A stretch of DNA of 64,000 nt from Macrostomum hystrix (GCA_950097015.1 CATNEN010000001.1:20770001-20834000), one strand, 5' to 3'. Counted from the stretch's first letter, positions 1 through 59,633 are shown. Notes: a model not told the origin generated them from the letters alone. A program made the numbers and translations.

Positions 1-48
1 GACCTCGTGTGGCACAGCTTGACAAGCATTTCCTGCTTCATTTAATAG

Positions 49-491
49 GGCCGGCTGACACTCAGCAAGCCAGGTCAGCCGAATCCAAACTCATCGAGTC
101 AACCTAACGTGAGCTCTCATTACCCGAGCACTCTGAGTGATGTTTGCCTTCAGAGTTTTACAATAATGTGACACGGACAACAAATGAATTTCAGCGCAAT
201 GGCCTCACATGTGATTCGGAGGGGGCCTACACCACTGCCAGTGTGGACCTCATTATCTCGCATGTATGTCGACTGCTGCATATTTTCCTGCGCTTTCTCT
301 GAGACCAGCTTCGGATTTGAACCTGACTGAGTCCCATTTCTGCGTCCTTCCACCTTAAGGGCAATAGAATGCGTCAGGCAGGTGCCGCCGATGCAGCGGA
401 AGGTGGCGACCCGGTCTACGAGATGACAATGGACCAGCAGTATGCCAACGTGGGCCCTTCAAACACCACAACCACCTTTCAGCTCGCCTAG
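49..491 (+). CDS. Gene 0: last three cytoplasmic-tail exons of an upstream family member (49-108, 195-263, 360-491)
   Basis: AG/GT-bounded phase-0 exons read GRLTLSKPGQPNPNSSSQPN / RNGLTCDSEGAYTTASVDLIISH / GNRMRQAGAADAAEGGDPVYEMTMDQQYANVGPSNTTTTFQLA*. Same three-exon layout and VYxxTxDxxYAN motif as the gene C tail. AATAAA at ~924. Confidence 0.7.
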
Positions 492-1094
492 ACTGATAAT
501 ACGTGATGCTGACCACAGAGGTCCTCAGGAAACTGGTGTGAACTATTATTAGGGCCACTGGAACCCTTCAGCCTTCAATGTAACCTTGCAACTTCCACTG
601 GAACCCAACAGCTTCACTGGAACGATTTTGATCGAGTATCGAGTGTGTCCCTGGTTTTTCGTAGCCTTGCCGTAATAGTTAAAATTTCTTCACTGCAGTT
701 TAATGTAGTTTCACAAGTTCACATACCGATTTTAATCTTGATTTCAATTTGCTCTTTTAAGTGCCAGTTTTGCCTGTCGATACAGCAGCTGTTTTCACTG
801 CTTCCTTCACAGCAGGTCTTCAGACATTAATGGGTCCACCTCAAATAATATTTCAGGAATATATTTTCATAATCTCGCAAGTCTGCGCTAAACTACTTTT
901 TTCTTATTTTCGTTTCGAAACGAAATAAAAGTGTATAAACCAATCAATTTTTTCATACATTTTGAGTAGCTCACATACCTATTTCATTTCAATTTGAATA
1001 ACTTTTTGCAAATTGCTTGCATGACATGTGTGCTATATCAATTTGGTGTTTATCTGCTTCTTAGATTAGTAGGATAGAATGAATGCAGTAGACC

Positions 1095-2098
1095 ACTCCC
1101 CCTTCCTTCACACTCACCATCCTCCTCACTCCCCATCCTCCTCACTCCCATCCTCCTCACTCCCCATCCTCCTCACTCCCCATCCTCCTCACTCCCCATC
1201 CTCCTCACTCCCCATCCTCCTCACTCCCCATCCTCCTCACTCCCCATTCTCCTCACTCCCCATTCTCCTCACTCCCCATTCTCCTCACTCCCCATCCTCC
1301 TCACTCCCCATCCTCCTCACTCCCCATTCTCCTCACTCCCCATCCTCCTCACTCCCCATCCTCCTCACTCCCCATCCTCCTCACTCCCCATTCTCCTCAC
1401 TCCCCATCCTCCTCACTCCCCATCCTCCTCACTCCCCATTCTCCTTACTCCCCATCCTCCTCACTCCCCATCCTCCTCACTCCCCATTCTCCTCACTCCC
1501 CATCCTCCTCACTACCCATTCTCCTTACTCCCCATAATCCTCACTCCCATCCTCCTCAATCCCATCCCCATCACTCCCCATCCTCCTCACTCCCCATTCT
1601 CCTCACTCCCCATCCTCCTCACTCCCCATCCTCCTCACTCCCCATTCTCCTTACTCCCCATCCTCCTCACTCCCCATCCTCCTCACTCCCCATTCTCCTC
1701 ACTCCCCATTCTCCTCACTCCCCATCCTCCTCACTCCCCATTCTCCTTACTCCCCATAATCCTCACTCCCATCCTCCTCAATCCCATCCCCATCACTCCC
1801 CATCCTCCTCACTCCCCATTCTCCTCACTCCCCATCCTCCTCACTCCCCATCCTCCTCACTCCCCATTCTCCTTACTCCCCATCCTCCTCACTCCCCATC
1901 CTCCTCACTCCCCATTCTCCTCACTCCCCATCCTCCTCACTCCCCATTCTCCTTACTCCCCATAATCCTCACTCCCATCCTCCTCAATCCCATCCCCATC
2001 ACTCCCCATTCTCCTCACTCCCCATCCTCCTCACTCCCCATCCTCCTCACTCCCCATCCTCCTCACTCCCCATCCTCCTCACTCCCCATCCTCCTCAC
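1095..2098. repeat. 16-bp minisatellite (CTCCCCATCCTCCTCA)n
   Basis: Direct tandem repeat, pyrimidine-rich on the + strand, just upstream of gene A. Confidence 0.97.
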
Positions 2099-2343
2099 TG
2101 GCTGCACATCTGGCCAAGCCGTGTCTGTCCGGTGTCTCTTTGGTCAGTTTTTTCTTTTAGAATATAATATTTAATGAAATTGTGGAAAGTTCTCAATATT
2201 GACTAAGAATTCTCAAAAAAGCGAAGAAAAAAGTATTTTTTGCGCTGCCTGAATTCGCCCAATGCCTGAAAAGAAACTGCATTGTTCATGAAAGTCTCGC
2301 CAATGAATTGCGAATTTCAGCTGTCATTCCCAGCATAGCAACA

Positions 2344-5300
2344 ATGTTCCTGAATTGGTCGAGTCTTTTGCTCCAATTGACGATCGCATTGTCTTTCGCA
2401 TCTGCCGCATCAGTTTCCATGCAGCAGTCATCAGGTGAGCTCATTAGGCAGGCTTCTCAAGGCGTTGCCAGTTGTCAAGAGTTTCACTGAGATCGGTGAG
2501 CATTTTGCCTGGCCTCTCATTTCAGATGTCGATGAAGCTGAAGCCACATTGGCGAGGCTGAGGAGAGCCGCCTGCAGTGCTGGCGACTGCCAGAATGGAG
2601 GCTTTTGCTGGCCGGGTCCTGTGATTGGGAGTACGCCTCCGTGCCTGTGTCCTGAGGGCTACACTGGCGCCTACTGCACTGTTAATCCTAGTGCAGTGGA
2701 CTACTGCGCACCTGGACCAGCCCCACCCTGCAAAAACGGAGCCACCTGCAACCGAATCGCCGTCAGTCCCTTCTACAGCTGCAGCTGCGTTCCCGGATTC
2801 ACAGGTAAAAACATAGATATTAAAGCAATATCTGTTTCAATCGTGCTTTAATATCTGTGGGTAAAACAATAGTTTCATTAAGCAATAGATAAATATTATC
2901 AAGATGCTAAAAGTCAATAACAGTTAAAATTTATGAATTGCTAATAATTTTCCTTATTTGCGAACATAAAAATGCATTTGTTGAGAAAGACAGTAAAGCC
3001 CTGTGTTCGATTGATTAAACTTGTTAAGCAAACGCCGTTGGGCAAAGCTGTGATGGATCAAATTTATTTTTTATGCATATCACAAAGTACACTGAACTTG
3101 GATTATCCTTACTTCTAGGAAAAACAGTGATATAAACAGGAATTAACTAGCATATTGGAAAGACAAAAGGTTAGACTCGGAGCGGCTGAGGTTGGAGGCT
3201 AGAGTGAGGATAGGAGAGCAGTTGGGTTGCACTCAGGATGGTAGGTATACTCAGGAGGTAGAGTATCTAGGGTAGAATGAGAAGGGTAGAGTGAGGAGGG
3301 TAGAGTGAGGAGGGTGGAGTGAGGAGGGTAGAGTGAGGAGGGTAGAGTGAGGAGGGTAGAGTGAGGAGGGTAGAGTGAGGAGGGCAGAGTGAGGAGGGTA
3401 GAGTGAGGAGGGTAGAGTGAGGAGGGTAGAATGAGGAGGGTAGAGTGAGGAGGGCAGAGTGAGGAGGGTAGAGTGAGGAGGGTGGAGTGAGGAGGGTAGA
3501 GTGAGGAGGGTAGAGTGAGGAGGGTAGAGTGAGGAGGGTAGAGTGAGGAGGGTAGAGTGAGGAGGGTAGAGTGAGGAGGGTAGAGTGAGGAGGGTAGAGT
3601 GAGGAGGGTAGAGTGAGGAGGGTAGAGTGAGGAGGGTAGAGTGAGGAGGGTAGAGTGAGGAGGGTAGAGTGAGGAGGGTAGAGTGAGGAGGGTAGAGTGA
3701 GGAGGGTAGAGTGAGGAGGGTAGAGTGAGGAGGGTAGAATGAGGACGGTAGAGTGAGGAGGGTAGAGTGAGGAGGGTAGAATGAGGAGGGTAGAGTGAGG
3801 AGGTAGAGTAGAGAGGGTAGAGTGAGGAGGGTAGAGTGAGGAGGGTAGAGTGAGGAGGGTAGAGTGAGGAGGGTAGAGTGAGGAGGGTAGAGTGAGGACG
3901 GTATAGTGAGAATCCTCTGAGATTTTGAATCAACTTTGTGCATATTTAATTAATCCACTGAGTTGTTTGCACTGTTTATTGCTTTAACACTGGCATTCAT
4001 CAACAGTTTCACTAAAATGGTTATATTGCTGAGTTTTTTGAGTCATATAAAGCATTGAAAGTTTTACTGTATTTCACGCTCATTTTAAAGGCCGATGAAA
4101 TTTTCGCTTATTATTATTAGATTTCGCAGGACACGTTGACCCTCGACTGATTATAACGAGGCGGCATTTTGTTCGAATTAAGTCAGTTAGACTAAGAAAT
4201 TTGCCGGATACGGATACGAAATTAGTGAATTCATCCCAGATAGGCAAAAAGCCAATTTCAGCTTGAAATATGAAAATCATGTAAAGATTTTAAACAACCG
4301 CAGGCGACCACTGCGACAACATCGACGACTGTGCCAGCCGGCCCTGCATCAACGGGGGCCGTTGTGTGGATGGCAACAGAACGTGAGTTTGCTTTCGTGT
4401 TTATTTGATACTGAGAGCCGATATAACACTTTTTCTATTTATTATCTATTCATTTCCAGATACACCTGCGACTGCTCAGGCCTGGGATTCAGCGGCTCCA
4501 GGTGCGAAATCAACATCAACGACTGCGCCAGCCATCCCTGCACAAACGGTCTGTGTTCGGACCTCGTGAAGGACTACAACTGCAGCTGCTACAGAGGCTG
4601 GGAGGGCTTCAACTGCTCAATCGACACAAACTACTGCCTGTCGTCGCCCTGCCTGAATGGAGGCCTGTGCAGCGATGGCAACTCCACGTGAGGATCTCAA
4701 AGCACAAAAATCACAAATGCGTGAATTTCATTTTATTTATTACAATTCTTTGCATCTTCGTTGAAGGTTCAGCTGCAACTGCTCTCAGATCGATTTTGAA
4801 GGCCCCACGTGCAGCTCAAAGATCGATGACTGTCTTAGAAGTCCCTGTCAGAATGGCGGCAGGTGCATCGACGACCTCAGAAACTACTCATGTGACTGCT
4901 CCAGCATCGACTTCTATGGGCGGAACTGTCAATCCCGAATTATTGACGACTGCTCGCCGAACCCGTGCAGGAACGGAGCCGCCTGCGTTGATGAGCTCAG
5001 AGGCTACACCTGCAGCTGCTATGCTGGCTACTCAGGAAAGAACTGCTCAATTGATTTCGTCGACTGCCCGCCAAACAACTGCCATTTCGGTGGTATCTGC
5101 TTGGAGCGCAGCAACCAAGCACTGTATGAAAACTCCGCCCTTCCAGCTCCGTTCAACGGAAGCTTCAGCTACGCACGGGCAGCCGGATTCGTCTGCATCT
5201 GCCTTGCTGGCAAGTCGCGTCTTTTCAAATTAAAAAAATAAGCGCTCACACAGATCACACTGCATCTCCGGAACCCGCAGGATCCTTCGGTCCAACATGC

Positions 5301-8300
5301 TCAGTGAACCCGGACGACTGCGTGCTGCCCGGCACCAACCAGAGCGTGTGCGCTCACGCCTCGAGCTGCACGGACGGCCTGGCCTCATTCACCTGCCACT
5401 GCCTGCCCGGATATGAGGGCGCCAACTGCAGCCGAGAAATCGACGAGTGCCACGCGCTGCCCCCGCCGTGTCCCTCCGGAGCGACCTGCATCGACCGGCT
5501 GGCGGATTTCGAGTGCGCAAACTGCCCCGCCGGACTGGGCGGCAGGAAGTGCTCGGTTCCGCTCACCGGCTGCAACTCCAGGCCGTGTGAGAACAATGCC
5601 AGCTGCGAACCGGTCCTCGTGAGCGAATTCCCCACACCTGTTCACGACTACCGGTGCCGCTGCAACACAGATTGGGGAGGTCGTGACTGCAGCTCTTCAA
5701 CCCTGGTCTCATTCAACGGCTCCTCTAGCTTCAGCGCCCTGCTCAGCATCGGAGCCTCGAGCAGCTCGGCTGACTGGACCTTCGAGCTCTCATTCCGGAG
5801 CAGTCTCACCCAGTTCGATCTGATTCGGCTGTCCTCAGACTCGGGACTCATCCGAGTCGGTGCTCACAACTCCAGCCTCGTGCTGCTGCTGCTGAATAGC
5901 AGCTCATCGTCTGTGATTGGTCAGACCAAGTGGCCAATCAGTGACAGTCTGGCTGCTGCTGATTGGCTCACACTGTCAGTCAGCCTGACCAATGGCAGTG
6001 CGACACTGACTCGGACGGGGTCGTCAGGAGTGAGGCAGTCTCTCACACAGCTGGTTGACGGACTGTCGCACACATTCAAGCGAGGCTCTGTGTCAGTTCG
6101 GGTCGGAGGCGACGCAGCATCGACCAGTGGCGGCTTCCGCGGCTGCGTGCGGGATCTGCGACTCGCGACTTCCAACTTGACATTCGTCGCCATGGAGACC
6201 ACTGTTGAGTCGAGCAACGCGACCTGGGGAGTGTGCAGTCGATCCGTGCAGTGCGGCAGCCCATCGCCCTGTGAGCTGAGCACGAGCTCGAGGTGCTTGG
6301 ATGTGTGGAATGACTTTGTGTGCCAGTGCGCAGCGGACTTTGGTGGCCGCAACTGCTCTGTGCGGCTTCCGTCGTTCTCATTCGGACTGGGTGGCAAAGC
6401 GTCCTCAGCAAGCTTCGAGTCAGTGCCCGCCGTCTCAAGCGTGTTCGGTGGCGACTCATGGACAACCGAGCTGAGGCTGGTGACTCTGTCTCCGGGAGCG
6501 TTTCTGATGTTGCTGGGCGACCCGAGCGACTCGGCGACCACTCCGCGACTGCTCGTCACGGTGAGTGAGCTACACAGATTTTCCAAAAAGGTACTGGTGT
6601 GTGGTCTGTGATCGGTCAATGTCTTTCTGCTCTGAATCTTTCTTTCTTCAGATCGGTCACACGGGCCGTCTCTCCGCTCAGTTTCTGCTTAGCAACGGAT
6701 CCCAAATCGCAGCGTTGACGTCCTCGGACTCGGTAGCCACTGGTCGGTTTGTTTCCGTTAAGATCTACTTGTCCGTTTCAAGTCGCGAGATGTCGCTGAC
6801 ACTGGATTCGTCTGCGAAGTCGGCATTTCTGAGCAGTTCGCTTTCCTTGTCGCAGCCTTCGGGTCAGCTCATAATCGGCGGCTTCAGCGGAGCCCGAGCT
6901 TTGAGCTCGTATATCGGAAGTTCCGGCAGGAAAAGGAGATCTGTTCCAGGCTTGCCAGCGAGTATTGTATCGAGCATGTCAGAAAACCTAACCGCCTTTC
7001 AAGGCGTCATTTCTGCTCCCAAGCTAAACGGTGATTTGCCGCTGATTTTGGGTCCTGTGACGTCCAGCTTGATCAGCAGCCTGCCAGAAGCTGTCGTGGC
7101 CAGCGAGTCTGCGGGAGTCACGGCTGGCTCTGTCACCGCGAACATCTGCGAAAACTCAAATCCGTGCAAGAACGGCGCCACCTGTTCGAACGTGTTTTTC
7201 AACTCTTACTCGTACGAGCATTGTATTGATGAGAATAATGAAATTGGTGAGTTATTTATTACCATGTCATTCAATTTCACTTGCCAGGTGCCGTTGTCAT
7301 GATGGCTTCAGCGGCGCCGACTGCGCAATCGACTTTCCCGACTGCCGCGAGAACCCTTGCAACAATGGCGAATCGTGTTTGGAGAAGAGCGACTTGTCGC
7401 TGTATAACAGCACATTTCTGCCGCAACCTTTCAATGAATCGTTTCGCTTCGCATCCGCCAGTGGATTCGTGTGCGTCACGCCATTTGGTGAGCGATTGCA
7501 TCACCAATCACCTGTAGCACCTGATTATTTGTACTCCAGATATGCTATATGCTGAACTGCTTTGAAATGCTTTTACCCGACCTTCCAGTTCTGGCGAAAA
7601 CAAGACCTGGGACCTCTGACGAAAGTCAGTTTTTTGGCAGCCCTGCGTTTGCCGTGTCTGTCATTCTCTTCATTCTCAGCTTTGTTCTGGCAACAATTTC
7701 CATCGTCCTGTTTTTCAACCGACAAAAGGTATGAGCACCGTCCTGACTGCTTAAAAATAATCTTGACATCTCAGTGTCTAATCTCAGTGTCTAATCTCAG
7801 TGTCTAATCTCAGTGTCTAATCTCAGTGTCTAATCTCAGTGTCTAATCTCAGTGTCTAATCTCAGTGTCTAATCTCAGTGTCTAATCTCAGTGTCTAATC
7901 TCAGTGTCTAATCTCAGTGTCTAATCTCAGTGTCTAATCTCAGTGTCTAATCTCAGTGTCTAATCTCAGTGTCTAATCTCAGTGTCTAATCTCAGTGTCT
8001 AATCTCAGTGTCTAATCTCAGTGTCTAATCTCAGTGTCTAATCTCAGTGTCTAATCTCAGTGTCTAATCTCAGTGTCTAATCTCAGTATCTAATCTCAGT
8101 GTCTAATCTCAGTGTCTAATCTCAGTGTCTAATCTCAGTGTCTAATCTCAGTGTCTCATCTGAGTGTCTTATCTCATTGTCTAATCTCAGTGTCTAATCT
8201 CAGTGTCTAATCTCAGTGTCTAATCTCAGTGTCTAATCTCAGTGTCTAATCTCAGTGTCTAATCTCAGTATCTAATCTCAGTGTCTAATCTCAGTCTCTA

Positions 8301-9489
8301 ATCTCAGTGTCTAATCTCAGTGTCTAATCTCAGTGTCTAATCTCAGTGTCTAATCTCAGTGTCTAAACTCAGTCTCTAATCTCAGTGTCTAATCTCAGTG
8401 TCTAATCTCAGTGTCTAATTTTAGTGTTTAATCTCAGTGTCGAATCTCAGTCTCTAATCTCAGTGTCTAATCTCAGTGTCTAATCTCAGTGTCTAATCTA
8501 AGTGTCTAATCTCAGTCTCTAATCTCAGTGTCTAATCTCAGTGTCTAATCTCAGTGTCTAATCTCAGTGTCTAATCTCAGTGTCTAATCTCAGTGTCTAA
8601 TCTCAGTGTCTAATCTCAGTGTCTAATCTCAGTGTCTAATCTCAGTGTCTAATCTCAGTGTCTAATCTCAGTGTCTAATCTCAGTATCTAATCTCAGTGT
8701 CTAATCTCAGTGTCTAATCTCAGTGTCTAAACTCAGTCTCTAATCTCAGTGTCTAATCTCAGTGTCTAATCTCAGTGTCTAATTTTAGTGTTTAATCTCA
8801 GTGTCGAATCTCAGTCTCTAATCTCAGTGTCTAATCTCAGTGTCTAATCTCAGTGTCTAATCTAAGTGTCTAATCTCAGTCTCTAATCTCAGTGTCTAAT
8901 CTCAGTGTCTAATCTCAGTGTCTAATCTCAGTCTCTAATCTCAGTGTCTAATCTCAGTGTCTAATCTCAGTGTCTAATCTCAGTGTCTAATCTCAGTGTC
9001 TAATCTCAGTGTCTAATCTCAGTATCTAATCTCAGTGTCTAATCTCAGTGTCTAATCTCAGTATCTAATCTCAGTATCTAATCTCAGTATCTAATCTCAG
9101 TGTCTAATCTCAGTGTCTAATCTCAGTGTCAAGTCTCAGTCTCAAATCTTAATGACAGTAGGAGCACAACAGAATGATAGCCAGGACATGAAGATTCCAT
9201 GCAATTTTGGTATTTCTGTATTTCAGGAACAGCCAAGTCCAGATCAAGATGCCATGAACACAATTTACGAAGAAGCCGACCAGAATATTAATCACGAACA
9301 TGTAAATGCTCGAATTTGTTATAACAATGGCTCCCATTCTGTTGAAATTGTTGATCGCTAATACCTGGTGCCTGGAACATTGCTTTGCAGCCAAATGATG
9401 CAGAAGCCAAGCAAGAAAATGACTCAGAATATGCCGTTGCTGACTTGGCTACGCCTCGTAGCGTAGCAATTCAGTTGAGCACAGTTTGA
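2344..9489 (+). CDS. Gene A: Crumbs-derived receptor, SP-11xEGF-LamG-EGF-LamG-EGF-truncated EGF-TM-Tyr tail ending -QLSTV (~1157 aa)
   Basis: Exons 2344-2434, 2526-2804, 4304-4382, 4460-4687, 4767-5209, 5281-6560, 6652-7211, 7288-7487, 7589-7728, 9227-9301, 9391-9489 join in frame (3474 nt). One GC-AG intron (5210-5280). Signal peptide MFLNWSSLLLQLTIALSFASA, TM AFAVSVILFILSFVLATISIVLFF, LamG end motif FRGCVRDLRL. Confidence 0.88.
3200..3910. repeat. 14-bp G-rich minisatellite (TAGAGTGAGGAGGG)n in gene A intron 2
   Basis: Direct tandem repeat. Its reverse complement shares the core CCTCCTCACTC with the 16-mer. Confidence 0.97.
7768..9145. repeat. 13-bp minisatellite (TCTAATCTCAGTG)n, ~105 units, in the intron after the gene A TM exon
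   Basis: Direct tandem repeat with occasional variants and one duplicated variant block. Confidence 0.98.
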
Positions 9490-11174
9490 AATCGTCGGTA
9501 TAGGATCAGTGCCTCACAAAGGCCTTGGTGGATATTGTGTACTGACAGATTCTCACTTCTCCGGAAAACTATTGATTCATTGACTCAACTTGATTTCAGA
9601 CACTCAGACTTTGCCTCTCTGAAAGTGTCTTACAATTCCCGCATGGAAATTGGAGTTATTCTGTTCAGTATTCAGTGTACAACAGATATTTGATGTTTTT
9701 AAACTGACTTCTTTTCACATTGAAGACATCTCTTCTGCGCTTGTTTATTCAAGAACTTTTTGTCACTTTTTTATGTCACATATTACTATAGATATTACTA
9801 TACATATTACTATAGATTTCCGGTTTACTCTTTGTTAACCGCCTCTTGCATAGTGTAAGATAAAGTTTGTTGTTTTTTATATTAAAGTCATGCTTTACCT
9901 CACAAACCCGCTGCTGACATGCGAGCACATGTGTTGACAATTTGTTGTCGAGTTCATTTTCTGCTTGAAAGTTCAGGCAACAGTCTACGTTTCTAGATTT
10001 GCAGAAAAGTTATCTCTCAGCATAGCCGTTTGTTTGTGTCAGTGACAATTAGACCGGAAAGTGACAGAATAAGGTGCGAATTTTAGGGAAAATTGCCCCA
10101 GCCAACGAGTGGTGCTTCTATATTTTATGTTCCTATTTATTTTCAGTCAATGGACATCAAGGCGAGCACACCTACCCTAACTACAATATGCTCTGTTCGG
10201 TGATCAAAATGGATATTTTAACATTTTATATAATTATAAAATCTAATATATAATATAGAACTTTTCTAAATTCGGTGTTCGATTTCGCATGCATTTTTCT
10301 AAGAAAATTAGACCTAGTATTCCAGTGGTCAGCTTTCAACCTCTGAGCGATTTAGAGTTGGGATTTGGAATCCCAGACCAACTGAGAAATGCATCTTTTT
10401 GAGTAAGATGCTCACTTCAAGAGAATGAGCTGGAGTAGGAATTCAGGTCGGTGTGGCGAGCCCTACTGTCCGCGGACTGTTTTTTCATTTTTATTCTGTA
10501 GCCTTTGGACCGCAGGCAAATCAACTGATTCTTAGTTTCGCTGCCACCAACTCTCCTGTCCTTCACCCAATCACCCAATACTATCTACAATACATTTCAG
10601 ATTTCATCCTTGATTTGTGACCGAAAAATGACATTCAAAGCAGCACTGAATTTCTGCATAGTGCTTCAAATGTCATTTAGCTTGGGTGTGTTGCCTTCTG
10701 CTTCTGGTCAGTTGTCGAGTTGAATTCTATTTGATTATAAAGTGTCTGTGACTTCTTATTGTAATGATAACACTTTTAGATGACACTGAATTATCGAGGC
10801 TGAGGAGAGCCGCCTGCAGTGCTGGCGACTGCCAGAATGGAGGCGTTTGCTGGCCGGGTCCTGTGACTGCAGCTACGCCTCCGTGCCTGTGTCCTCTGGG
10901 CTACACTGGCGCCTACTGCACTGTTGTTGATCCTAGTACAGTTGACTACTGCGCACCCGGACTCGACAACCCCTGCAAAAACGGAGCCACCTGCAACCGA
11001 ATGGCCGTCAGTCCCTTCTACAGCTGCAGCTGCGTTCCAGGATTCTCTGGTAAAACAATAAATTTATTCGTCGATATGTATATACATATTTTTATGCTGA
11101 TGAAGAGTCTCAAACGTACTATCGATTAAAATAATTGCATATTTTATTCTTTGGTTTATTTTCTGTCATCTTGA

Positions 11175-11538
11175 GGGGGTCGTTGGCAGAGCGGTTATCG
11201 CGTTTGCCTCTCGCACCAAGTTCCCTAAGTTCGATTCCACGGCGAGGCCAAATTTATTTGGGGCGCAGCCGCAGAGTGAAGGCTTTGGGGGCTTGTCGTG
11301 CAATTTTCGCCATTGAGGGCCCACCTCCAAGGCACAGTGAATGTGTACAATGCCGATGATAAAGTCAGGGCAGATGTACACACCTGTGTGAGCGTGTGCC
11401 TGCGTAAAGTTTCTGTGTGCGTGTGCTCAGGAGTCAGCAAAATGGGCAGAATTGCCTCCTCGCCTCCTGCGGGTCTAGTGTCACCAAATGATGTGCCATT
11501 GCCCGCAGCCCTCCTGCAATTATTATTATTATTATTAT
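11175..11538 (+). mobile_element. tRNA-derived SINE (family 1), full-length-looking copy
   Basis: GGGGG start, A-box-like TGGCAGAGCGG, B-box GTTCGATTCC, (TTA)n tail, flanking TCTGTCAT target-site-duplication-like match. Related copies occur elsewhere in the window. Confidence 0.85.
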
Positions 11539-11797
11539 CTGTCATATTTTGTCATATTTGTGACCATTTTCGGTGACTAAATGTCCTAATGTCCAAGTCC
11601 TAAGTTCATAGATCTAAATTTTTAGACAAGTACTCTCAGTCAAAGCTTTGAAAGATCAAAACATTTGCATATTATTTACATGAAATTCCACTAAACTTGC
11701 TAACTGCTCGTGTCTATGTGGAAAACAGTGGTAGCATTGGGAATGAACTAGAACTTCATAAGAAAAATATGTAGTAAGTTGTTAAAAGCAAAGTTTA

Positions 11798-37303: not shown

Positions 37304-37336
<33 letters not shown>

Positions 37337-38202: not shown

Positions 38203-38246
<44 letters not shown>

Positions 38247-51576: not shown

Positions 51577-54500
51577 ATGCGGCCCTGTTACCTGAGGCCT
51601 GTGGTGCTACTGCTTGTTCTAACTGCTGCCTACAGCCTGCTTCCAGTGATCTACGCGGCAGCAGCGAGCCAGGTATTTACAGGTAAAAAGCTGTTTGTGG
51701 AGCTTTATGTCAAGCCTTTAAACATGCCGATCAACCCCAATCCCTGAAACATCCCAACCCTTATGACATCCCAACCTCTGAGGCATCCCAATACCTGAAA
51801 CTTCCCAATCGCTGCCTAATCTCTGAAACATCCTAATCCCTGAAATATCCCAATCTCTGAAACTTCCCAACCTCTGAAACTTCCCAATCCCTGAAACTTC
51901 CCAATCCCTGAAACTTCCTAATCCCTGAAACTTCCCAATCCCTGAAACATCCCAATCCCTGAAACTTCCCAACCTCTGAAACATCCCAATCCCTGAAACT
52001 TCCCAATCCCTGAAACTTCCCAATCCCTGAAACTTCCTAATCCCTGAAACTTCCCAATCCCTGAAACATCCCAATCCCTGAAACTTCCCAACCTCTGAAA
52101 CATCCCAATCCCTGAAACTTCCCAATCCCTGAAACTTCCCAATCCCTGAAACTTCCCAATCCCTGAAACTTCCCAATCCCTGAAACTTCCCAACCTCTGA
52201 AACATCCCAATCCCTGAAACTTCCCAATCCCTGAAACTTCCCAATCCCTGAAACTTCCCAACCTCTGAAACTTCCTAATCCCTGAAACTTCCCAATCCCT
52301 GAAACTTCCTAATCCCTGAAACTTCCCAATCCCTGAAACATCCCAACCTCTGAAACTTCCTAATCCCTGAAACTTCCCAATCCCTGAAACTTCCCGATCG
52401 CTGCGCAATCTCTGAAACATCCCAACCTCTTAAACTTCACAATCTCTGAAATATCCCAATTTCTGAAATATCCCAACCACTAAAACATGAAAACTTTCCT
52501 TAACACCCGAGCCCCTAAAACACACCTATTCATGACACTGTACACTGTACGCTGCAGCTAGACATTACAATCACCATGTAACCTGAACTCGCAGGCCTCA
52601 GTGAGAGTCTGGCTCTGTTATCTCGGCAGCGCAGTGCCCCCTGTGGCTCTTTCGATTGCATGAACGGTGGGATTTGCAACTCCAGCGCTCCCAGCCCGGT
52701 GTGCACCTGCCCCAAGCCGTACACCGGAGACAACTGCAGCGCCGTGCAAAACTACTGCAACAAACTGCAGCCCGAGATGAACATCACAGCACTGCCAGTG
52801 TGCCTGAATGACGCCAGCTGCACATCGACTGCAACGGACCCATTTTTCTCCTGCAGATGTACTAGTAACTATACGGGTGAGTTCACGGCGCTTAATTGTC
52901 AAACCCTTGAGCCTTCTCAAAGCCGTCTTACAGAGACCATAAAATGTTGATTCCCAATTTTCCTCTAATATCAGATGCAAAGAAAGCATCCTACTTGATG
53001 GCCCAAGATGATAATCTGTGACAGAAAATGTTGCTCAATACATTGTGGAGATTGACAAAATTAGTGTTGGCTAAACCACTGCTTGGAAGAATATGTTTAG
53101 TTACTTTTAATTAAAGTATTTATTTATTGTTGCAATACATTTAATTTACATGTGATACAATTACGAGTGCATATTCGCCAAAAAATACTCTTAGTTTTGA
53201 CATTTTCGTGAAAAATGCCCATGATGAATATTTTTTTAGATCTAAAATAATTTTTTGAATACTGGTTCCATCACCTAAATTGCGTGCGACATGATTTCAG
53301 TAATAAAATTCTTTAAAAAAATCCTATTCAAACCGCACTATGGGGGTGAGTGACATTGCAGGCAATTCGCACTCTACAGGGGGGTGAGTGGCAGAGGTCT
53401 AACGCGTTTGCCTCTCGCGCCAAGGTTCTTAGGCTCGATTCCGCGGCGAGGCCACATTTATTTTGGGGCGCAGCAGCGGAGAGAAGGCTTGCGAGCTTGT
53501 CGTGCAATTTACGCCCTTGAGGGCCAGCCTCCAAGGCACAGTGCCTGACGATGAGAAAGTCAGGGCAGATGTACACACCTGTGTGAGTATGTGCCTGCGT
53601 ACAGTATCTGTGTGCGTGTGTGCCCATGAGCCAGCGAAATGGGCAGAATTGCCTACTCGCAGGCTGCGCTTCTACTTTCAATAAATAATGTGCCAGAGTA
53701 CACACAAATATAAGCTTTTAAATATCATTATTATACCGCACTATAAAGAAAATGCTGGATATATTTTTAAAGCAAATAAAATCCCTCCATAAATTCCCGA
53801 ACTAAACTCACCAGGCCCAAGATGTGACACTGTCAACCTGTGCGCCTTCGCAAACCCATGCGTCAACGGGCAGTGCGAGGTCGCTTCCACCGGAGCCGAA
53901 TGCCGCTGCTACTCTGGCTGGGCCGGACCGAAATGTGATGCAGACGTCGATTACTGCTCAACTGGGCCTTGCGAAAATGGCGGAAAGTGCATCGATGGAA
54001 ACTCGACGTAGGCTTAATATTTTTTTTATCGAATTTTAAATCCATGCGAGAAATCTTGAAGATTTAAGATTCGGGTAAAGTTGAGAACTCGAGGACATTG
54101 CAAGGATGCAGTCTACGTACCTCCGCGTCCACTGATGATTTATTAAATTTGCTCGATGGAGACACCCACAGACAGAACTCAAACTGGTTACAAAAAGACC
54201 TACTCTGAATATTTCATTTTGACTCATATCTCGTGCATCTGTGTCAGATTCAGCTGCAACTGCTCAGCCACGGACTTCTGGGGCACCAGCTGCACCAACT
54301 GGATCAACGACTGTCAGCCAGATCCCTGTACCAATGGCGCCACCTGTATTGACGGATTGAGAAACTTCACCTGCAACTGTCAGGACGGCTATTCTGGAAG
54401 GAACTGCTCTGAGGATTTCCCCGACTGCAGCCCGAACCCTTGCGCCTTCAATGCCACGTGTCTGGAGCGCAGCAAGCGGAGCTGGTACGGCATCAGCTCG

Positions 54501-57500
54501 CTGCCCGCGCCTTTCAACGGCCAGTTTCGCTACTCCCAGGCTGCTGGCTACGTCTGCGATTTAGGTTATGAGAACGGTGAGACATTTCTGGCTCCAGGTC
54601 GACAGGACGAGGTTTATACTGCTTTTTGAGATTTGCTTCAATTATCACGGTACTGTTTGTGCACTGTCTAACAGTTTAGAGCACTGTCTAACAGTTTAGA
54701 GCACTGTCTAACAGTTTGGAGCACTGTCTAACAGTTTGGAGCACTGTCTAACAGTTTAGAGCACTGTCTAACAGTTTAGAGCACTGTCTAACAGTTTAGT
54801 GCACTGTCTAACAGTTTGGAGCACTGTCTAACAGTTTGGAGCACTGTCTAACAGTTTGGAGCACCGTCTAACAGTTTGGTGCACTGTCTAACAGTTTGGG
54901 GCACTGTCTAACAGTTTGGTGCACTGTCTAACAGTTTAGTGCACTGTCTAACAGTTTGGTGCACTGTCTAACAGTTTGGAGCACTGTCTAACAGTTTGGT
55001 GCACTGTCTAACAGTTTGGAGCACTGTCTAACAGTTTGGTGCACTGTCTAACAGTTTGGAGCACTGTCTAACAGTTTGGTGCACTGTCTAACAGTTTAGT
55101 GCACTGTCTAACAGTTTGGTGCACTGTCTAACAGTTTGGAGCACTGTCTAACAGTTTGGTGCACTGTCTAACAGTTTGGAGCACTGTCTAACAGTTTGGT
55201 GCACTGTCTAACAGTTTGGAGCACTGTCTAACAGTTTGGTGCACTGTCTAACAGTTTGGAGCACTGTCTAACAGTTTGGTGCACTGTCTAACAGTTTCGA
55301 GCACTGTCTAACAGTTTAGAGCACTGTCTAACAGTTTGGAGCACTGTCTAACAGTTTGGAGCACTGTCTAACAGTTTGGTGCACTGTCTAGCAGTTTTGT
55401 GCACTGTCTAACAGTTTGGTGCACTGTCTAACAGTTTGGAGCACTGTCTAACAGTTTGGTGCACTGTCTAACAGTTTCGAGCACTGTCTAACAGTTTAGA
55501 GCACTGTCTAACAGTTTGGAGCACTGTCTAACAGTTTGGAGCACTGTCTAACAGTTTGGTGCACTGTCTAGCAGTTTTGTGCACTGTCTAACAGTTTGGT
55601 GCACTGTCTAACAGTTTGGAGCACTGTCTAACAGTTTGGTGCACTGTCTAACAGTTTGGAGCACTGTCTAACAGTTTGGAGCACTGTCTAACAGTTTGGT
55701 GCACTGTCTAACAGTTTGGAGCACTGTCTAACAGTTTGGTGCACTGTCTAACAGTTTGGAGCACTGTCTAACAGTTTGGAGCACTGTCTAACAGTTTGGA
55801 GCACTGTCTAACAGTTTGGTGCACTGTCTAACAGTTTGGAGCACTGTCTAACAGTTTGGAGCACTGTCTAACAGTTTCGTGTACTGTCTAACAAGCTGTG
55901 CAGTCTAACATGCTGTGCAATGTCTGGCAGGTAAGGATCTTTCTTACTTTCTACAGAGATATAGATCATATTACTATATTACCCAGTATTTAGTATTTTC
56001 TTGAGTACTGTTTGTCTGTGATTACAAAAATTCCAGAGCTACACCAGAAGCTGCTCATTGGTTTGGCAATCGGCATTCCAGTCGGCATTGTTGCTGGTGT
56101 CATCTTGGCCATAGTCGGCTTCGTTGTGTATCTTTATTTGCACAAACAGGTGAGAATCAACCAGAGCTTGTTGTGTTTCTGACAGACAGGTAAGAATAAA
56201 TCAATCAATACTCCTTCGCTGTTTCAGGGCAAGCTGTCTCTCGGCTACTTCGGAAATCCCATTCAAAAATACGTCACTGAGGTGAGCCTTCGAGACATTG
56301 TAAACCTGAAGCTTAAATGTCAATATTAATGGACTTGATGAAGCATGCACGTCTAGTCCGAATTGGAAACTTCCAACTGCACTAACAATAAGAATGCATC
56401 AACTGTCATTATTTCAGACTGCTGAACAGAATGCCTATGAGATGCCGATGGCACCTACAGAAGGAAACGACCAGATCTACCTTGATCCAGACAATATGGA
56501 TGATGGACCTGTGAGTTAAAGGTGGCAAAATAAACAGGTGCTTTGCAAACGATGAGATTGCCTGACTTTAGAAATGACAGTAGCAGATTACACAATATAG
56601 TGCAGCTAAATACCATCTACACATGTTAGGCATCCTACTAAAAAAGCTGATATTTTTATGTTAGACAAGATTGTGACCTTCTTGGCTGAATTTTATTTGA
56701 TGGAATAATTGAAGTTGAAACTCTCTGCTAAATGTTGCAGCGGCTGCAGCCAGCAACTGGTGCTGGCCCTTCTAACGCACTGAGCTCAGCGGCTGAGATG
56801 TCAGGCGTGAGAAAGCAAAACGGCGCAGATACGAAGAAGAAAGGTAAGATTGTTCTATTCAAGACCAAAAAGGAAGACGATACGGACGGACCGATACAGC
56901 TCAAGCCAAACTCTAGCCAGGTAATTGAATGCTTTCTGGTACTGTGGGTTTAGGTTTACAGTAGGGGTCAAAGCGATGAGTGTCACAGGTCTCGAGCTCG
57001 ATTCCGCGGCGAGGTCACATTCATTTGGGGCACAGTCACGGAGAGAAGGCTTGAAGGCTTGTCGTACAATTTACACCTGCGAGGGCCAAACACCAAGGCA
57101 CAGGGAATGTACACTGTCCGACAGTCAGAACATCGACCAAATGGTGTGCCAGTGCCCTGCTGCAAATGTTGCTTTTATTATTAGGTTTTGTGTTATGAAG
57201 TAACAAATAAATATTCTAATCTCGATAGAAGCACAAGAAGCACAAGCACAACCAGCCTGAGCAGCAGCAGCCGCAGCCAACAATGCCAGGGGAATCGGAA
57301 TATGCTGCTGTTTATGAGCAACAAAATACTTCGAAAAAGAACTCAGCCAAACAACAGCAAGATGCCAATGAACGAATAAAGAAGAAATCTAAAAAGGCAG
57401 ACAAGAGCAATCAAGGAAGTTCGCATAATCAGGTCCAACTACCGGCCGCAGCCGCAGGCTCTACTGCCTCGTTGCCTGGAGCCAGTTTCGGCAACAAGTC

Positions 57501-59550
57501 GCTGACTGAAGTGCAAAAGCGACTGTCGCAGCCACCTTCAAGACCGGTACGATCTACGAACACTGGCAGTAATCTCAACGTGAGTTGATCAGTGATCAGT
57601 GATGTGTGGCAACCGTTTGTGTTTGTCAAATCAGAGCTGTCACAAGCATGCAGACAGGGCATGTACAGCTGGCTTTATCGTCCTACATTCTTATAGGGTC
57701 ATTCTCTGCACGGCCAGTGCACAATACGGCTGTACGCCTCTACGGCTCAAATTATTTTGATCTCAGGTTCCTGAAAATTCATTGTGATAGTGAGCCTCCC
57801 TGCCTTCTGTTGCGTGGCCCTAGCAACCCCCTGTGTTGAAGTTTTTCATCGTGGTGTGTACCCCCGCACCTCCTCTAGGCCAGCCATGGTGATGGACGGG
57901 CCACTGCATTATATTTCACTGCCCTCATTGCGTGTTCAACCCCCACCAATTGTGGCGCTTAAGCCATCTGCCATCTCGCTTCGGATTGGCTGTCCATGTC
58001 CAGGCTTGTAACTCCTCTATTTTTCTCTACCCTGCTCTTGTGCTGATTGGCTGAACGGCCTCTATCTGGCCTTAAGCCCTTGACTTTCTACCCCTGCCTG
58101 TAATACTATAATGTAATACTATAAATCTAGACCCCCCTGCAAGCCCTCGTTTCTGCGCGCCCCCCCTTAAGGCAAGATTGTTACAAGAAAGGCCGGTTGT
58201 GACTCCCTTTTACTTGCCCATCCTACTGCGTGGCTGACAGTCTGTAAAATACTTCGGTCTACGCTCTCACGAAAGAAACCGTGCTGCACCTTGACAGCGA
58301 GCGTAAGCTTGTTCTGTCTGATTTGGGGTTGGCTTGACGAGGACGAGGACGCCAACTCTGCGTCGTTAGTGATAAGGTAAAAGGCGACCACAGCATCTGG
58401 GTCAGTACACGAGCCCGGGTTTACCCAGGATTACCCCGCTCACGACATCATTATAAAGTCCCCACAAGATTTTATATATTGATTGCACTAACAGCCTCTG
58501 TGCCAACTAGTATACCGTCTGTGTTCGTAAATTCGTGATAAACTTTTTTCATACTCCAACTCACAGACCGAGAGCGAAGAGCTGTACGTTGAACCAGACA
58601 GCATTCATCTGACTGATCAGGATATTCAGCAGCAGCAGCAGCAGCAGCAGCAGGAGGTATGCGATTCCTTCAAGCTTTTTATTTTTGCTCTTACCCTTGC
58701 GGAGGAAAATAATCCCGTGCTTGCTAGCTAGAACTTTAGGGCGCAGAATCTCGATAGTCAGTAGCTAAACTAGTATTCTAAATTGTTAGAGTTTGGTTAG
58801 AATGCTGAATAAATTCCTGACATTTCTGCAGCAGCTGTGTGTCTGCCGTTTCAGCTGAGTGAGCTGTTCCCCATACGAAGTCGAAAACTCGAAAATTTGA
58901 AAATCCTTTTTTTTGGGCCTTTATATATCGATTTTATCTACTAGCAGAGCTACCGTGCGGAAAACAAGACAAAATAAGAAACAGACAAGCGGCTGCTAAA
59001 ATGTAGAGAAATTGTTCAGCGTTCTGCTGAAACAAACATGCTGACAGACACATTGCGACAGACACAGCCTACAATGATCCGAAAAATGGTGTTTAGCGAG
59101 GTGTTGGTTCTCCATTTTATCTTCTGAGCTCCATGACTGATTCGAGTAAGATCAGCTGCATCACCTTTGTCAAATGCCAGCCCGAGCCAGAGGCTGTCTA
59201 CGTTGTGCCCGACAGTGCCCTAAGCCAGCCAATGGAGCTGCTTAATCAAGTGAACGGACCACCGCCAAAGCTGCCGAAGCCGAAACCCAGGGGCCAGCAG
59301 CAGCAGCAGCCCCCGACTGTGGAACTCAGTAGCCATCCAAACAACAGAGCTAGTCAACTGAATATTGTGGTAAGATGCTCAAACAAGACTGTCCAGGTTG
59401 TTGCACTCAGTTGCTTACAGCTGATCCGTGCTAAAAAGTTATCCCTGAAACTTTAACAGCGCCAAGACACGGCAGCAAACAACGGTGAAGCCGGTGGATC
59501 AGTGGAAAACGAGTACGATGTGATTGACAATGCTCCGAATTCAGCGAATG

Positions 59551-59588
<38 letters not shown>

Positions 59589-59633
59589 AAGAAGGTGGAT
59601 TTAAGCCGAGTAGAGACATTTACCAAAATTTAA
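51577..59633 (+). CDS. Gene D': near-identical duplicate of gene D (~714-717 aa), ends -ETFTKI
   Basis: Exons 51577-51682, 52595-52876, 53815-54007, 54248-54576, 56037-56149, 56228-56281, 56418-56510, 56750(or 56741)-56920, 57229-57579, 58567-58656, 59181-59369, 59460-59633. Confidence 0.82.
51735..52485. repeat. 17-bp minisatellite in gene D' intron 1
   Basis: (CCCTGAAACTTCCCAAT)n. Confidence 0.96.
53379..53690 (+). mobile_element. tRNA-derived SINE family 1 copy
   Basis: Duplicate of 29615-29920. Confidence 0.8.
54658..55895. repeat. 20-bp minisatellite, ~62 units, in the gene D' pre-TM intron
   Basis: Same unit as 30890-33485, about half the length. Confidence 0.98.
56961..57120 (+). 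mobile_element. Degenerate SINE family 1 copy
   Basis: Duplicate of 34543-34705. Confidence 0.7.
57808..58447 (+). mobile_element. Solo-LTR-like element in gene D' intron 9
   Basis: Duplicate of 36500-37124. Confidence 0.5.

What the first reader, a model, noticed from the sequence alone, without database searches (positions are those of the whole stretch)
49..59633. Tandem cluster of Crumbs-derived receptors that replaced the polarity tail with tyrosine-signalling tails
Seen: at least seven co-oriented genes (0, A, B, C, D, C', D'). A through D' have a signal peptide, EGF arrays, 0/1/2 LamG domains and one TM; gene 0 shows only its tail. Established: the long-insert EGF (CLERS..ALY...PFNGSFSY..AAGFVC), the GG+.CSV.LTGC EGF before LamG1 and the EGF/LamG alternation are hallmarks of Crumbs/CRB1/CRB2. 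Crumbs normally has a ~37-aa tail with GTY (FERM) and ERLI (PDZ) motifs and occurs in few copies. Seen: none of the recovered tails has these motifs. They are 60-380 aa, multi-exon and Tyr-motif-rich. Inference: a lineage-specific, expanding family of variable recognition receptors (immune, allorecognition, gamete or adhesion) built from a polarity-gene ectodomain, which I do not recognise as a described family.
Basis: partly seen in the sequence, partly recalled or inferred. Interest (0 to 1): 0.92.

Follow-up and report, generated by a model that had tools for sequence, protein, structure and literature searches.

The report
Flatworm Crumbs gene cluster with swapped tails
A Macrostomum flatworm has copied the cell-polarity gene crumbs into a cluster of about 15 neighbouring genes; most keep the Crumbs outer part but carry new inner tails, which suggests the outer part was reused for new signalling jobs.

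Summary
The window (G000:C1:20,770,001-20,834,000, a 220-Mb Macrostomum genome, not M. lignano) holds the tail of gene 0, five intact co-oriented genes (A, C, D, C', D') and gene B. B is a pseudogene.

The Crumbs ancestry is strongly supported.
- Gene A aligns colinearly with insect Crumbs and shares both hallmark motifs.
- A canonical crumbs gene (3 LamG, tail ...GTYGPS...PPPEERLI) lies on the minus strand about 70 kb past the window's end, in the same roughly 165-kb cluster of about 15 genes.
- Its LamG1 is nearly identical to the paralogues' LamG1 (dS 0-0.10), while LamG2 has dS above 1. This points to gene conversion.

No window gene has a GTY or ERLI tail. I found four tail classes:
- canonical;
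- a short ...GVRxGHLR...Q[DE]M[FY]F class, outside the window;
- a dual-tyrosine class, VYxxTxDxxYAN[VM], also present in M. lignano;
- a tail of about 370-400 aa with four YxxP motifs (D genes), whose splicing is shown by transcript contigs.

Tyrosine signalling and a recognition role remain inference. The family is uncharacterised; M. lignano members are auto-named Delta, Notch or Cubilin. The scan earlier noted a separate cluster of short Crumbs-like genes on another piece of this genome (s1-388020).

The parts
1..491 (+). 3' end of gene 0. Its N-terminal exon, LamG2, last EGF and TM lie upstream at C1:20764255-20769694. The terminal exon (about 327-488, stop 489-491) reads ...GDPVYEMTMDQQYANVGPSNTTTTFQLA*.
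   Evidence: The exon aligns with the M. lignano tail ...GVYETSTDDHTYDNL...SSIQLA.
2344..9361 (+). Gene A. Parts: signal-peptide exon 2344-2432; EGF-pair exon about 2507-2809; EGF exons about 4450-4688 and 4765-5214, the second with the long-insert EGF CLERSNQALY...; large exon about 5274-6590 (EGFs, GGRKCSVPLTGC, LamG1, EGF, start of LamG2); rest of LamG2 6610-7242; second long-insert EGF 7289-7489; TM exon 7621-7733; predicted terminal exon 9227-9361 (...NTIYEEA...).
   Evidence: Pfam. ORFs. Signal peptide. Colinear alignment with Copidosoma Crumbs, 49% over 153 aa and 29% over 380 aa. The tail exon is predicted only from phase-0 AG/GT sites.
5691..6251 (+). LamG1 domain of gene A.
   Evidence: Pfam Laminin_G_2 E = 0.0066, below cut-off. 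The model matches LNS/LG domains with probability 1.00. There are 8 copies in the genome, all in this cluster, 95-97% identical, with dS 0-0.10. phmmer against 1.84 billion proteins found only M. lignano relatives.
10764..15123 (+). Gene B, a pseudogene copy of gene 0. Parts: EGF pair 10764-11054; EGFs 12091-13045; frameshifted EGF exon about 13206-13690; LamG2 14003-14575; long-insert EGF 14655-14855; TM 14980-15060. The terminal tail exon is missing and the 15358-17363 minisatellite sits in its place.
   Evidence: Homology to the 3' region of gene 0 ends at 15345. A 2-nt insertion at about 13432 and a 14-nt insertion at about 13582 break the frame.
18701..24928 (+). Gene C. Parts: signal-peptide exon from 18701; EGF pair 18864-19169; EGF exons 21134-21331 and 21520-21876; large exon 21962-23257 with CSVRLTGC and LamG1 22382-22936; LamG2 23310-23867; long-insert EGF 23946-24146; TM exon 24288-24440; terminal exon 24803-24928 (...DVYDTTIDSNYANMDQKYNC*).
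27991..38291 (+). Gene D, with no LamG. Parts: signal-peptide exon from 27991; EGF pair 28823-29140; EGF 30023-30238; EGFs plus long-insert EGF 30480-30806; TM exon 33627-33740; tail exons 33819-33872, 34009-34101, 34326-34502, 34811-35161, 37244 to about 37300 or beyond, about 37834-38022, and 38112-38291 (...ETFTKI*). Tail motifs: YEMP, YLDP, YAAV, YEQQ, YVEP, YVVP, YDVI and PPPKLPKPKPR.
   Evidence: Transcript contigs show the GT..AG joints 33737/33816, 33870/34007, 34500/34809, 35161/37244 and 38021/38111. A loose end equal to 30777-30806 joins to 33627. Translations. Motif statistics. Signal peptide.
41081..48178 (+). Gene C', a duplicate of C from LamG1 onward, with a different N-terminal EGF set. 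LamG1 45657-46214; LamG2 46594-47142; TM 47585-47686; terminal exon 48053-48178.
   Evidence: All pieces are free of stops.
51577..59633 (+). Gene D', a duplicate of D. EGF pair 52582-52899; TM 56036-56149; tail exons run to the stop at 59631-59633.
   Evidence: All 11 pieces are intact and 93-100% identical to D.
2608..2735 (+). Hypervariable patch of about 40 codons spanning the end of EGF1 and the start of EGF2 in the N-terminal EGF pair (coordinates approximate, given for gene A). It is flanked by nearly invariant exon sequence and by a 98.4% identical intron 1 (2433-2520).
   Evidence: Patch dN 0.21 and dS 0.18; rest of the exon dN 0.008 and dS 0.033.

Best explanation
The window is the middle of a cluster of about 165 kb (C1:20.757-20.919 Mb) holding about 15 crumbs paralogues. 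They arose by tandem and segmental duplication next to the canonical crumbs gene of a Macrostomum flatworm.

The paralogues keep the Crumbs-type extracellular part: signal peptide, N-terminal EGF pair, EGF array with the Crumbs-specific long-insert EGF, 0-3 LamG domains, and one TM segment. In most of them the 37-aa FERM/PDZ polarity tail has been replaced by one of three unrelated, disordered, multi-exon tails.

Shown:
- homology to Crumbs;
- the cluster layout;
- the absence of GTY and ERLI in the window genes;
- splicing and transcription of the D-type tail;
- conservation of two new tail classes in M. lignano;
- mosaic evolution, with LamG1 and the N-terminal exon homogenised by gene conversion, LamG2 anciently diverged, and a hypervariable patch in the distal EGF pair.

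Inferred: the proteins are type-I surface receptors or adhesion molecules. Their Crumbs-like ectodomain would bind a partner, possibly other Crumbs-type ectodomains. Their tails would recruit different cytoplasmic partners through short tyrosine motifs and C-terminal PDZ-type endings, instead of the Pals1/Moesin polarity machinery. Candidate motif readings are YxN (Grb2-type), YxxP (Crk, Nck or Abl-type) and YxxPhi (AP-2 sorting).
For: - Pfam finds EGF and LamG, and the LamG1 model has an LG fold.
- Copidosoma Crumbs aligns colinearly with gene A: 49% identity over 153 aa including CLERSN.ALY, then 29% over 380 aa including GG..CSVPL.GC and LamG1.
- Both motifs occur once each in 4 of 4 insect Crumbs and in 0 of 5 other EGF/LamG proteins fetched.
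- The C-terminal part of the M. lignano family member P0015 hits insect Crumbs best (E = 2.7e-23). The next named family, SNED1, scores 5.5e-7. ESM Atlas neighbours are CRB1 and CRB2 clusters.
- The canonical gene lies on the minus strand at C1:20918803-20904386, with 3 LamG domains and the tail RRKETGTYGPS...PPPEERLI.
- LamG1 dS is 0-0.10 among all copies including the canonical gene, against LamG2 dS of 1-2.
- The window has no ERLI or GTY.
- The D tail is spliced in transcript contigs, and 4 of its 9 tyrosines are YxxP.
- The dual-tyrosine terminal exon is shared by gene 0, C, C', C'' and M. lignano P0001/P0002.
- The ...GVRxGHLR...Q[DE][VM][FY]F tail is shared by E, F, G, H and M. lignano P0014/15/17/22/23.
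- C' and D' are intact.
Against: - Expression is shown only for the D-type tail, and only from assembled contigs of two runs from one study whose type is not on record.
- The tails of A and C are predictions or rest on conservation only.
- B is a pseudogene, so some decay is going on.
- D, D' and D'' are too recent to show selection on the tail (dS 0.01-0.03, omega 0.6-1.2).
- The N-terminal patch omega of about 1.2 is not distinguishable from relaxed constraint.
- No tail matches a strict ITAM or ITIM, and Pfam finds no domain in any tail.
- No phosphorylation, binding or localisation data exist.
Confidence: 0.72

Rival explanations
1. Most copies are recent, functionally redundant or decaying by-products of segmental duplication in an unstable, minisatellite-rich region. 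On this view the 'new tails' are incidental downstream ORFs with no selected function.
For: - B is frameshifted and has lost its last exon.
- C-D is triplicated at 92-96% identity.
- dN/dS is 0.6-1.2 in the D tails and about 0.8-1 in the N-terminal exon.
- Introns are full of minisatellites of 0.6-2.6 kb.
Against: - Exons of 440-490 aa are open in A, C and C', and all pieces of C' and D' are intact.
- LamG2 has dN/dS of 0.2-0.35 at dS above 1, so it has been under long-term constraint.
- The D tail is spliced through seven introns in high-depth transcript contigs.
- Two non-canonical tail classes are conserved between two Macrostomum species whose ectodomains are only 60-70% identical.
Confidence: 0.12
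2. The genes are functional, but the tyrosine motifs are membrane-trafficking signals rather than phosphotyrosine docking sites. They would be YxxPhi motifs read by AP-2 or AP-1, directing endocytosis or basolateral sorting. The tail swap would then change where the Crumbs-like ectodomain is displayed, not what it signals.
For: YANV, YANM, YDNL, YAAV and YDVI all fit YxxPhi. The canonical Crumbs tail also controls localisation and trafficking (established knowledge; PMC6681134 is listed).
Against: Four D-tail tyrosines are YxxP with acidic residues upstream. That is a kinase-substrate and SH2 context, not YxxPhi. The conserved first tyrosine of the dual motif (VYE/DxT) is not YxxPhi. A proline-rich PPPKLPKPKPR stretch suggests SH3 adaptors.
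Confidence: 0.25
3. The ectodomains are not Crumbs-derived. They belong instead to Notch/Delta, fibropellin, Eys or SNED1-type EGF proteins, as the automatic UniProt names of the M. lignano homologues suggest.
For: UniRef names the M. lignano relatives 'Delta-like', 'Neurogenic locus Notch' and 'Cubilin'. The LamG1 sequence alone finds no Crumbs.
Against: - Gene A aligns colinearly with Crumbs, including both signature motifs.
- Crumbs is the best family outside Macrostomum.
- An ERLI-ending 3-LamG gene in the same cluster has a 96-97% identical LamG1.
- The Pfam scan of gene A exons found no DSL, LNR, ANK or CUB domains.
Confidence: 0.02

Closest known systems
Crumbs / CRB1 / CRB2 (apical polarity determinants)
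   Same: Signal peptide, EGF array with the long-insert EGF (CLERSN.xLY...), the GGxxCSVxLxGC EGF before LamG1, EGF/LamG alternation and a single TM. The canonical member is in the same cluster and exchanges sequence with the paralogues.
   Different: The window genes have 0-2 LamG domains instead of 3, and none has the 37-aa tail with the GTY (FERM) and ERLI (PDZ) motifs. Their tails are about 50 to 400 aa, multi-exon and of three unrelated classes. There are about 15 clustered copies instead of 1-3.
Alternative-tail Crumbs isoforms, for example mammalian CRB3-CLPI (PMC2064851)
   Same: A Crumbs ectodomain or TM is coupled to a C-terminus that lacks ERLI and has a different function.
   Different: There the change comes from alternative splicing of one gene with a short alternative end. 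Here separate duplicated genes carry long new tails, and no splicing to ERLI was seen for D.
Cluster of short Crumbs-like LamG-EGF-TM genes on another piece of this genome (earlier scan finding s1-388020), and the ERLI gene at C26:175033-182144
   Same: A lineage-specific crumbs duplication in the same genome, with some copies keeping and some losing the ERLI tail.
   Different: Those genes are very short and reported as intronless. The present cluster has long, multi-exon genes with full EGF arrays, gene conversion with the canonical gene, and conserved new tail classes.
Adhesion receptors that signal through tyrosine docking motifs (nephrin-type YDxV/Nck sites, p130Cas-type YxxP arrays, Grb2-type YxN sites). 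This is what it may work like, not a membership claim.
   Same: A disordered cytoplasmic tail with repeated acidic-context YxxP and YxN motifs plus a proline-rich stretch.
   Different: There is no sequence homology, and phosphorylation and adaptor binding are untested here.

Membership tests
Crumbs (CRB) family | EGF array containing the long-insert EGF (C-L-E-R-S-N-x-x-L-Y ... G-[FY]-x-C), followed about 120 aa later by the GGxxCSVxLxGC EGF directly before the first LamG. | tested here: met
   Gene A aligns colinearly with Copidosoma Crumbs residues 753-903 and 900-1247. The motifs are present in 4 of 4 insect Crumbs and 0 of 5 other EGF/LamG proteins. C and C' keep CSVRLTGC and a membrane-proximal long-insert EGF. 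D keeps only the long-insert EGF.
Crumbs (CRB) family | Three LamG domains alternating with EGF domains. | tested here: not met
   Window genes have 2 (A, C, C'), 1 (B) or 0 (D, D') LamG domains. Three LamG domains are found only in the canonical minus-strand gene. A LamG3 module also occurs in g-1 and E outside the window.
Crumbs (CRB) family | Single-pass type-I membrane protein. | tested here: met
   Signal-peptide exons and one hydrophobic segment per gene.
Crumbs (CRB) family | Short tail of about 37 aa with the FERM-binding GTY motif and a C-terminal ERLI PDZ ligand. | tested here: not met
   A six-frame scan of the window finds no ERLI-stop or GTYxP. D ends ...ETFTKI, C ends ...DQKYNC and gene 0 ends ...FQLA. 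The feature is met only by C1:20904386-20904520(-) and by C26...182144.
Notch / Delta / Cubilin (automatic names of the M. lignano homologues) | DSL, LNR/NOD, ankyrin or CUB domains. | tested here: not met
   The Pfam scan of gene A exons and the precomputed Pfam lists of the M. lignano proteins show only EGF-type and Laminin_G families.
ITAM/ITIM immunoreceptor tails | Yxx[LI]-x(6-12)-Yxx[LI] for ITAM, or [SIVL]xYxx[ILV] for ITIM. | tested here: not met
   The conserved dual motif is VY[ED]x[TS]xDxxY[AD]N[VML]. The first tyrosine is not YxxL/I, and position -2 of the second is not S, I, V or L. Pfam finds no ITAM model hit.
Phosphotyrosine docking tails (SH2 or PTB ligands) | Tyrosines phosphorylated in vivo and bound by SH2 or PTB adaptors. 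| not testable with these tools
   Only motif context is available: YxN in gene 0, C and M. lignano; 4 of 9 YxxP in D (p = 0.0045).

The most novel reading that the evidence does not exclude
The cluster is a Crumbs-derived variable recognition system. Gene conversion keeps the scaffold (LamG1, most of the N-terminal exon, intron 1) uniform. A distal EGF patch is kept different between paralogues by diversifying selection. Binding is read out through phosphotyrosine or PDZ tails. It could serve self/non-self, partner or gamete recognition in a hermaphroditic flatworm, and would be a recognition-receptor family built from a polarity gene.
Probability: 0.15. Interest if true: 0.88.

Novelty: new variant of a known kind. 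Interest (0 to 1): 0.7.

Why it matters
The function of the large Crumbs ectodomain is one of the less understood parts of the polarity machinery. Most known Crumbs biology runs through the 37-aa tail.

Here evolution has kept the ectodomain and discarded that tail, repeatedly, in a lineage with about 15 clustered copies. This argues that the ectodomain has an autonomous, reusable binding function. It also provides natural 'tail-swap' variants with which to study it.

The family also exists in M. lignano, a flatworm model in which RNAi and transgenesis are established methods (from my own knowledge, not checked here), so the idea could be tested directly.

The locus is also a clear example of mosaic concerted evolution. 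LamG1 has dS of 0-0.1, LamG2 in the same genes has dS above 1, and a hypervariable patch sits inside a homogenised exon.

Tried and rejected
- **LamG1 search.** phmmer of LamG1 against 1.84 billion representatives gave only M. lignano relatives plus marginal bacterial LamG-like hits, and no Crumbs. LamG1 alone therefore cannot place the family.
- **Length-limited searches.** The search for homologous proteins with P0004 residues 330-1010 and with the window exon 5274-6608 returned only M. lignano proteins.
- **Tail pattern.** The pattern for ...PQEVFF-stop (the M. lignano tail) is absent from this genome. The orthologous tails here end QDMFF, QEMFF or QDMYF.
- **Origin of the new tails.** Tail exons of all three new classes match only inside this cluster, so no donor gene was found.
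- **Domains in the tails.** Pfam finds none.
- **Selection on the D tail.** D, D' and D'' are too similar to say anything.
- **LamG2 tree.** Copies group by species rather than by tail class (93/88 support). This is compatible with concerted evolution or with independent expansion. No insect outgroup passed the filter.
- Only one reads call was allowed, so A, C and gene 0 transcripts could not be checked.


Full report
**What is in the window.** The sequence is animal DNA with multi-exon genes and many intronic minisatellites. Earlier notes of this scan call the genome a Macrostomum flatworm. This fits my results: the only close protein relatives are from M. lignano, at 60-70% identity, so the species is a different Macrostomum. 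The window is G000:C1:20,770,001-20,834,000 of a 220-Mb assembly.

**Domains.** Stop-free + strand stretches rich in cysteine give Pfam EGF hits and weak Laminin_G_2 hits. An AlphaFold model of the first LamG (5691-6251; pLDDT 72, pTM 0.76) matches neurexin, agrin and laminin LG domains with Foldseek probability 1.00.

**Gene inventory.** Module mapping by tblastn, signal-peptide and TM scans and peptide look-ups give the following.
- Gene 0: tail only, stop at 489-491.
- A: 2344-9361, 2 LamG.
- B: 10764 to about 15123, 1 LamG.
- C: 18701-24928, 2 LamG.
- D: 27991-38291, no LamG.
- C': 41081-48178.
- D': 51577-59633.

C-D and C'-D' are a segmental duplication of about 23 kb at 92-96% identity. 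All coding pieces of C' and D' are free of stops.

B is not intact. Compared with its near-identical paralogue gene 0 (LamG2 dN 0.002, dS 0), it carries a 2-nt and a 14-nt insertion that break the frame. Its homology to the 3' region of gene 0 ends at 15345, where a 2-kb minisatellite replaces the segment that holds the terminal tail exon in gene 0. I also found no convincing signal peptide for B.

**Is the ectodomain Crumbs?** Yes.
- The exon 4765-5238 aligns with Copidosoma floridanum 'protein crumbs' residues 753-903 at 49% identity. This includes the long-insert EGF (CLERSNQALYENSAL--PAPFNGSFSYARAAGFVCIC against CLERSNAALYKEDVMNKPAVFMQEFTYANSSGYECIC).
- The next exon continues colinearly from residue 900 to 1247 at 29% identity (E = 6e-37). 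It includes GGRKCSVPLTGC against GGKNCSVPLIGC, and LamG1.
- Both motifs occur once each, about 120 residues apart, in all four insect Crumbs fetched. They occur in none of the five other EGF/LamG proteins fetched (SNED1, Slit3, N-cadherin-like and two unnamed).
- The LamG3-EGF-TM part of the M. lignano family member P0015 hits insect Crumbs first (E = 2.7e-23 to 6.7e-11). SNED1 follows only at 5.5e-7. ESM Atlas neighbours are CRB1 and CRB2 clusters.
- LamG1 by itself finds nothing outside Macrostomum, so it is highly diverged.

**The canonical gene.** A degenerate DNA pattern for PEERLI-stop has a single match in the genome, at C1:20904383-20904403 on the minus strand. The exon reads ...FVQNRRKETGTYGPSKAESSSNSRAAQAPPPVRPPPEERLI. 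It aligns end to end with the insect Crumbs tail, including GTYxPS and PPPEERLI. Upstream on the same strand lie an N-terminal EGF pair, a long-insert EGF, CSVRLTGC, LamG1, LamG2, and LamG3-EGF-TM. So the canonical crumbs gene sits tail-to-tail at the far end of the same cluster, about 70 kb beyond the window. A second ERLI-ending gene (...RRSETGQYRPS...PPVEERLI) lies on contig C26. It may relate to the short Crumbs-like cluster reported earlier by this scan on another piece (s1-388020).

**Size of the family.**
- LamG1 has 8 copies, all at C1:20.775-20.910 Mb.
- The N-terminal EGF-pair exon has 12 matches in this cluster, plus weaker ones on C26 and C38.
- LamG3 has 4 copies.

Mapping gives about 15 genes between 20.757 and 20.919 Mb: g-1, gene 0, A, B, C, D, C', D', C'', D'', E, F, G, H and canonical crb.

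**Tails.** None of the window genes has GTY or ERLI in any frame. I distinguish four tail classes.
1. Canonical: crb in this cluster, and the C26 gene.
2. A tail of about 45-50 aa...DGPTGVR[VM]GHLR...Q[DE]M[FY]F, in E, F, G and H, all outside the window. It also occurs as ...GVRVGHLR...PQEVFF in M. lignano P0014/15/17/22/23. Its end fits a hydrophobic (class II-like) PDZ ligand; this is inference.
3. A terminal exon with V-Y-[ED]-x-[TS]-x-D-x-x-Y-[AD]-N-[VML], in gene 0, C, C', C'' and M. lignano P0001/P0002. Gene 0 and the M. lignano proteins also share the ending [FI]QLA.
4. The long D-type tail.

For class 4, two public runs of one study hold about a quarter of the words of 33520-38400. Their type is not on record. 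Their contigs skip GT..AG introns at 33737/33816, 33870/34007, 34500/34809, 35161/37244 and 38021/38111. A loose end identical to 30777-30806 (...GYVCDLGYEN) joins the last EGF exon to the TM exon at 33627. These contigs are therefore transcript-derived. They differ from D at a few percent of positions, so they may come from D', D'' or another strain.

The exons translate in one frame each to a TM segment plus about 370 cytoplasmic residues ending ETFTKI-stop. Tyrosine is only 2.5% of the tail. However, 4 of the 9 tyrosines are YxxP (binomial p = 0.0045) and 6 of 9 have an acidic residue at -4 to -1. The motif [LV]YV[EV]PDS occurs twice, and there is a PPPKLPKPKPR stretch.

The tail of A (NRQK | EQPSPDQDAMNTIYEEADQ...) is only a phase-compatible prediction. 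Pfam finds no domain in any tail. The tail exons have no match elsewhere in the genome, so their origin is unknown.

**Evolutionary pattern.**
- Pairwise dS for LamG1 is 0.00-0.10 among A, C, C', F, G, H and canonical crb (H against crb: dS 0). For LamG2 in the same genes dS is 1.0-2.1, with dN/dS 0.2-0.35. The genes are therefore old, and LamG1 is being homogenised, most simply by gene conversion that includes the canonical gene.
- The N-terminal exon shows the same effect on a finer scale. Intron 1 is 98.4% identical among seven paralogues and the EGF-pair exon 92%, while the flanks are about 50%.
- Inside that exon a patch of about 40 codons has dN 0.21 and dS 0.18 (dN above dS in 18 of 21 pairs). 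The rest of the exon has dN 0.008 and dS 0.033. This fits differences being maintained against conversion (diversifying selection), but relaxed constraint in an unconverted tract is not excluded.
- A LamG2 tree groups copies by species rather than by tail class. Since two tail classes are shared between species, this again suggests concerted evolution of ectodomains after the classes arose.

**Mechanism: what is shown and what is inferred.** Shown: these are Crumbs paralogues with signal peptide, TM and non-canonical tails; at least the D type is transcribed and spliced; two new tail classes are conserved across species. Inferred: they act as surface receptors or adhesion molecules that use a Crumbs-type ectodomain but couple to adaptors other than Pals1/Stardust and FERM proteins. 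YxN and YxxP motifs suggest SH2 adaptors of Grb2, Crk or Nck type. The same or neighbouring tyrosines also fit YxxPhi sorting signals, which is a serious rival reading.

**Novelty.** Full-text searches found no paper on a crumbs expansion in Macrostomum or other flatworms. The M. lignano proteins carry only automatic names. Alternative Crumbs C-termini are known from splicing, for example CRB3-CLPI (PMC2064851, listed). I know of no clustered paralogue family with long tyrosine-motif tails. I class this as a new variant of a known kind.

**Limits.** I did not send joined (spliced) protein models to any search tool; exons were searched by reference only. Only one reads call was available, so transcripts of A, C and gene 0 were not examined. 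Exon borders other than those of the D tail are approximate.

Noticed in passing
window 13206-13700 and 15345-17363: Gene B is a pseudogene copy of gene 0. It has a 2-nt insertion near 13432 and a 14-nt tandem duplication at 13582-13608. The terminal tail exon has been lost where a 2-kb 16-bp minisatellite now sits.
   Followed up: yes
G000:C1:20904386-20918803 (minus strand), 70-85 kb beyond the window end: Canonical crumbs gene: 3 LamG, tail RRKETGTYGPS...PPPEERLI. It lies tail-to-tail with paralogue H, and its LamG1 is identical to that of H at synonymous sites.
   Followed up: yes
G000:C26:175033-182144 (L013/L014): A second ERLI-ending Crumbs-like gene with an N-terminal EGF pair, few EGFs, one LamG3-type domain, a TM and the tail RRSETGQYRPS...PPVEERLI.
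   Followed up: partly
window 6928-6939 (A), about 14330 (B), about 23590 (C); g-1 at about C1:20758950: An R-x-[KR]-R (furin-type) site sits in a loop of LamG2 in the paralogues (GRKRRS, KRLKRS, GRSKRS, RSKRS). The canonical crumbs gene reads SSTSRAA at the aligned place, so the paralogues may be proteolytically processed.
   Followed up: partly
window 1094-2099 (+) and 3269-3910 (reverse complement); also 15358-17363, 39867-40199, 42023-42774, 63724-64000: Arrays of the same 14/16-bp minisatellite (CACTCCCCATCCTCCT and AGGGTAGAGTGAGG) in opposite orientation bracket the signal-peptide and EGF-pair exons of gene A. They recur at gene borders throughout the cluster.
   Followed up: no
window 11175-11498, 29616-29924, 53380-53695; also in introns of the canonical gene (about C1:20904800-20907300): A dispersed repeat of about 320 bp (80-82% identical copies), probably a short transposable element, is inserted in several introns of the cluster.
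   Followed up: no
window 62022-62379 versus 4159-4519: A 360-bp segment 97.5% identical to intron 2 and the start of exon 3 of gene A lies after D', and has no counterpart after D. It is an orphan fragment or a conversion tract.
   Followed up: no
G000:C38:8.80-10.72 Mb: Nine weaker matches (37-49% identity) to the N-terminal EGF-pair exon, several clustered at 9.17-9.20 Mb on the minus strand. This may be another group of related EGF genes.
   Followed up: no
G000:C1:20760214-20761023 (upstream of the window): Downstream of the LamG3-TM exon of paralogue g-1 there are open stretches with SYLNPD, SYAYL, AEYVCF, RPLPPIP and EGVYLSDE. This is a possible further tyrosine/SH3-motif tail, and no RNA check was made.
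   Followed up: partly
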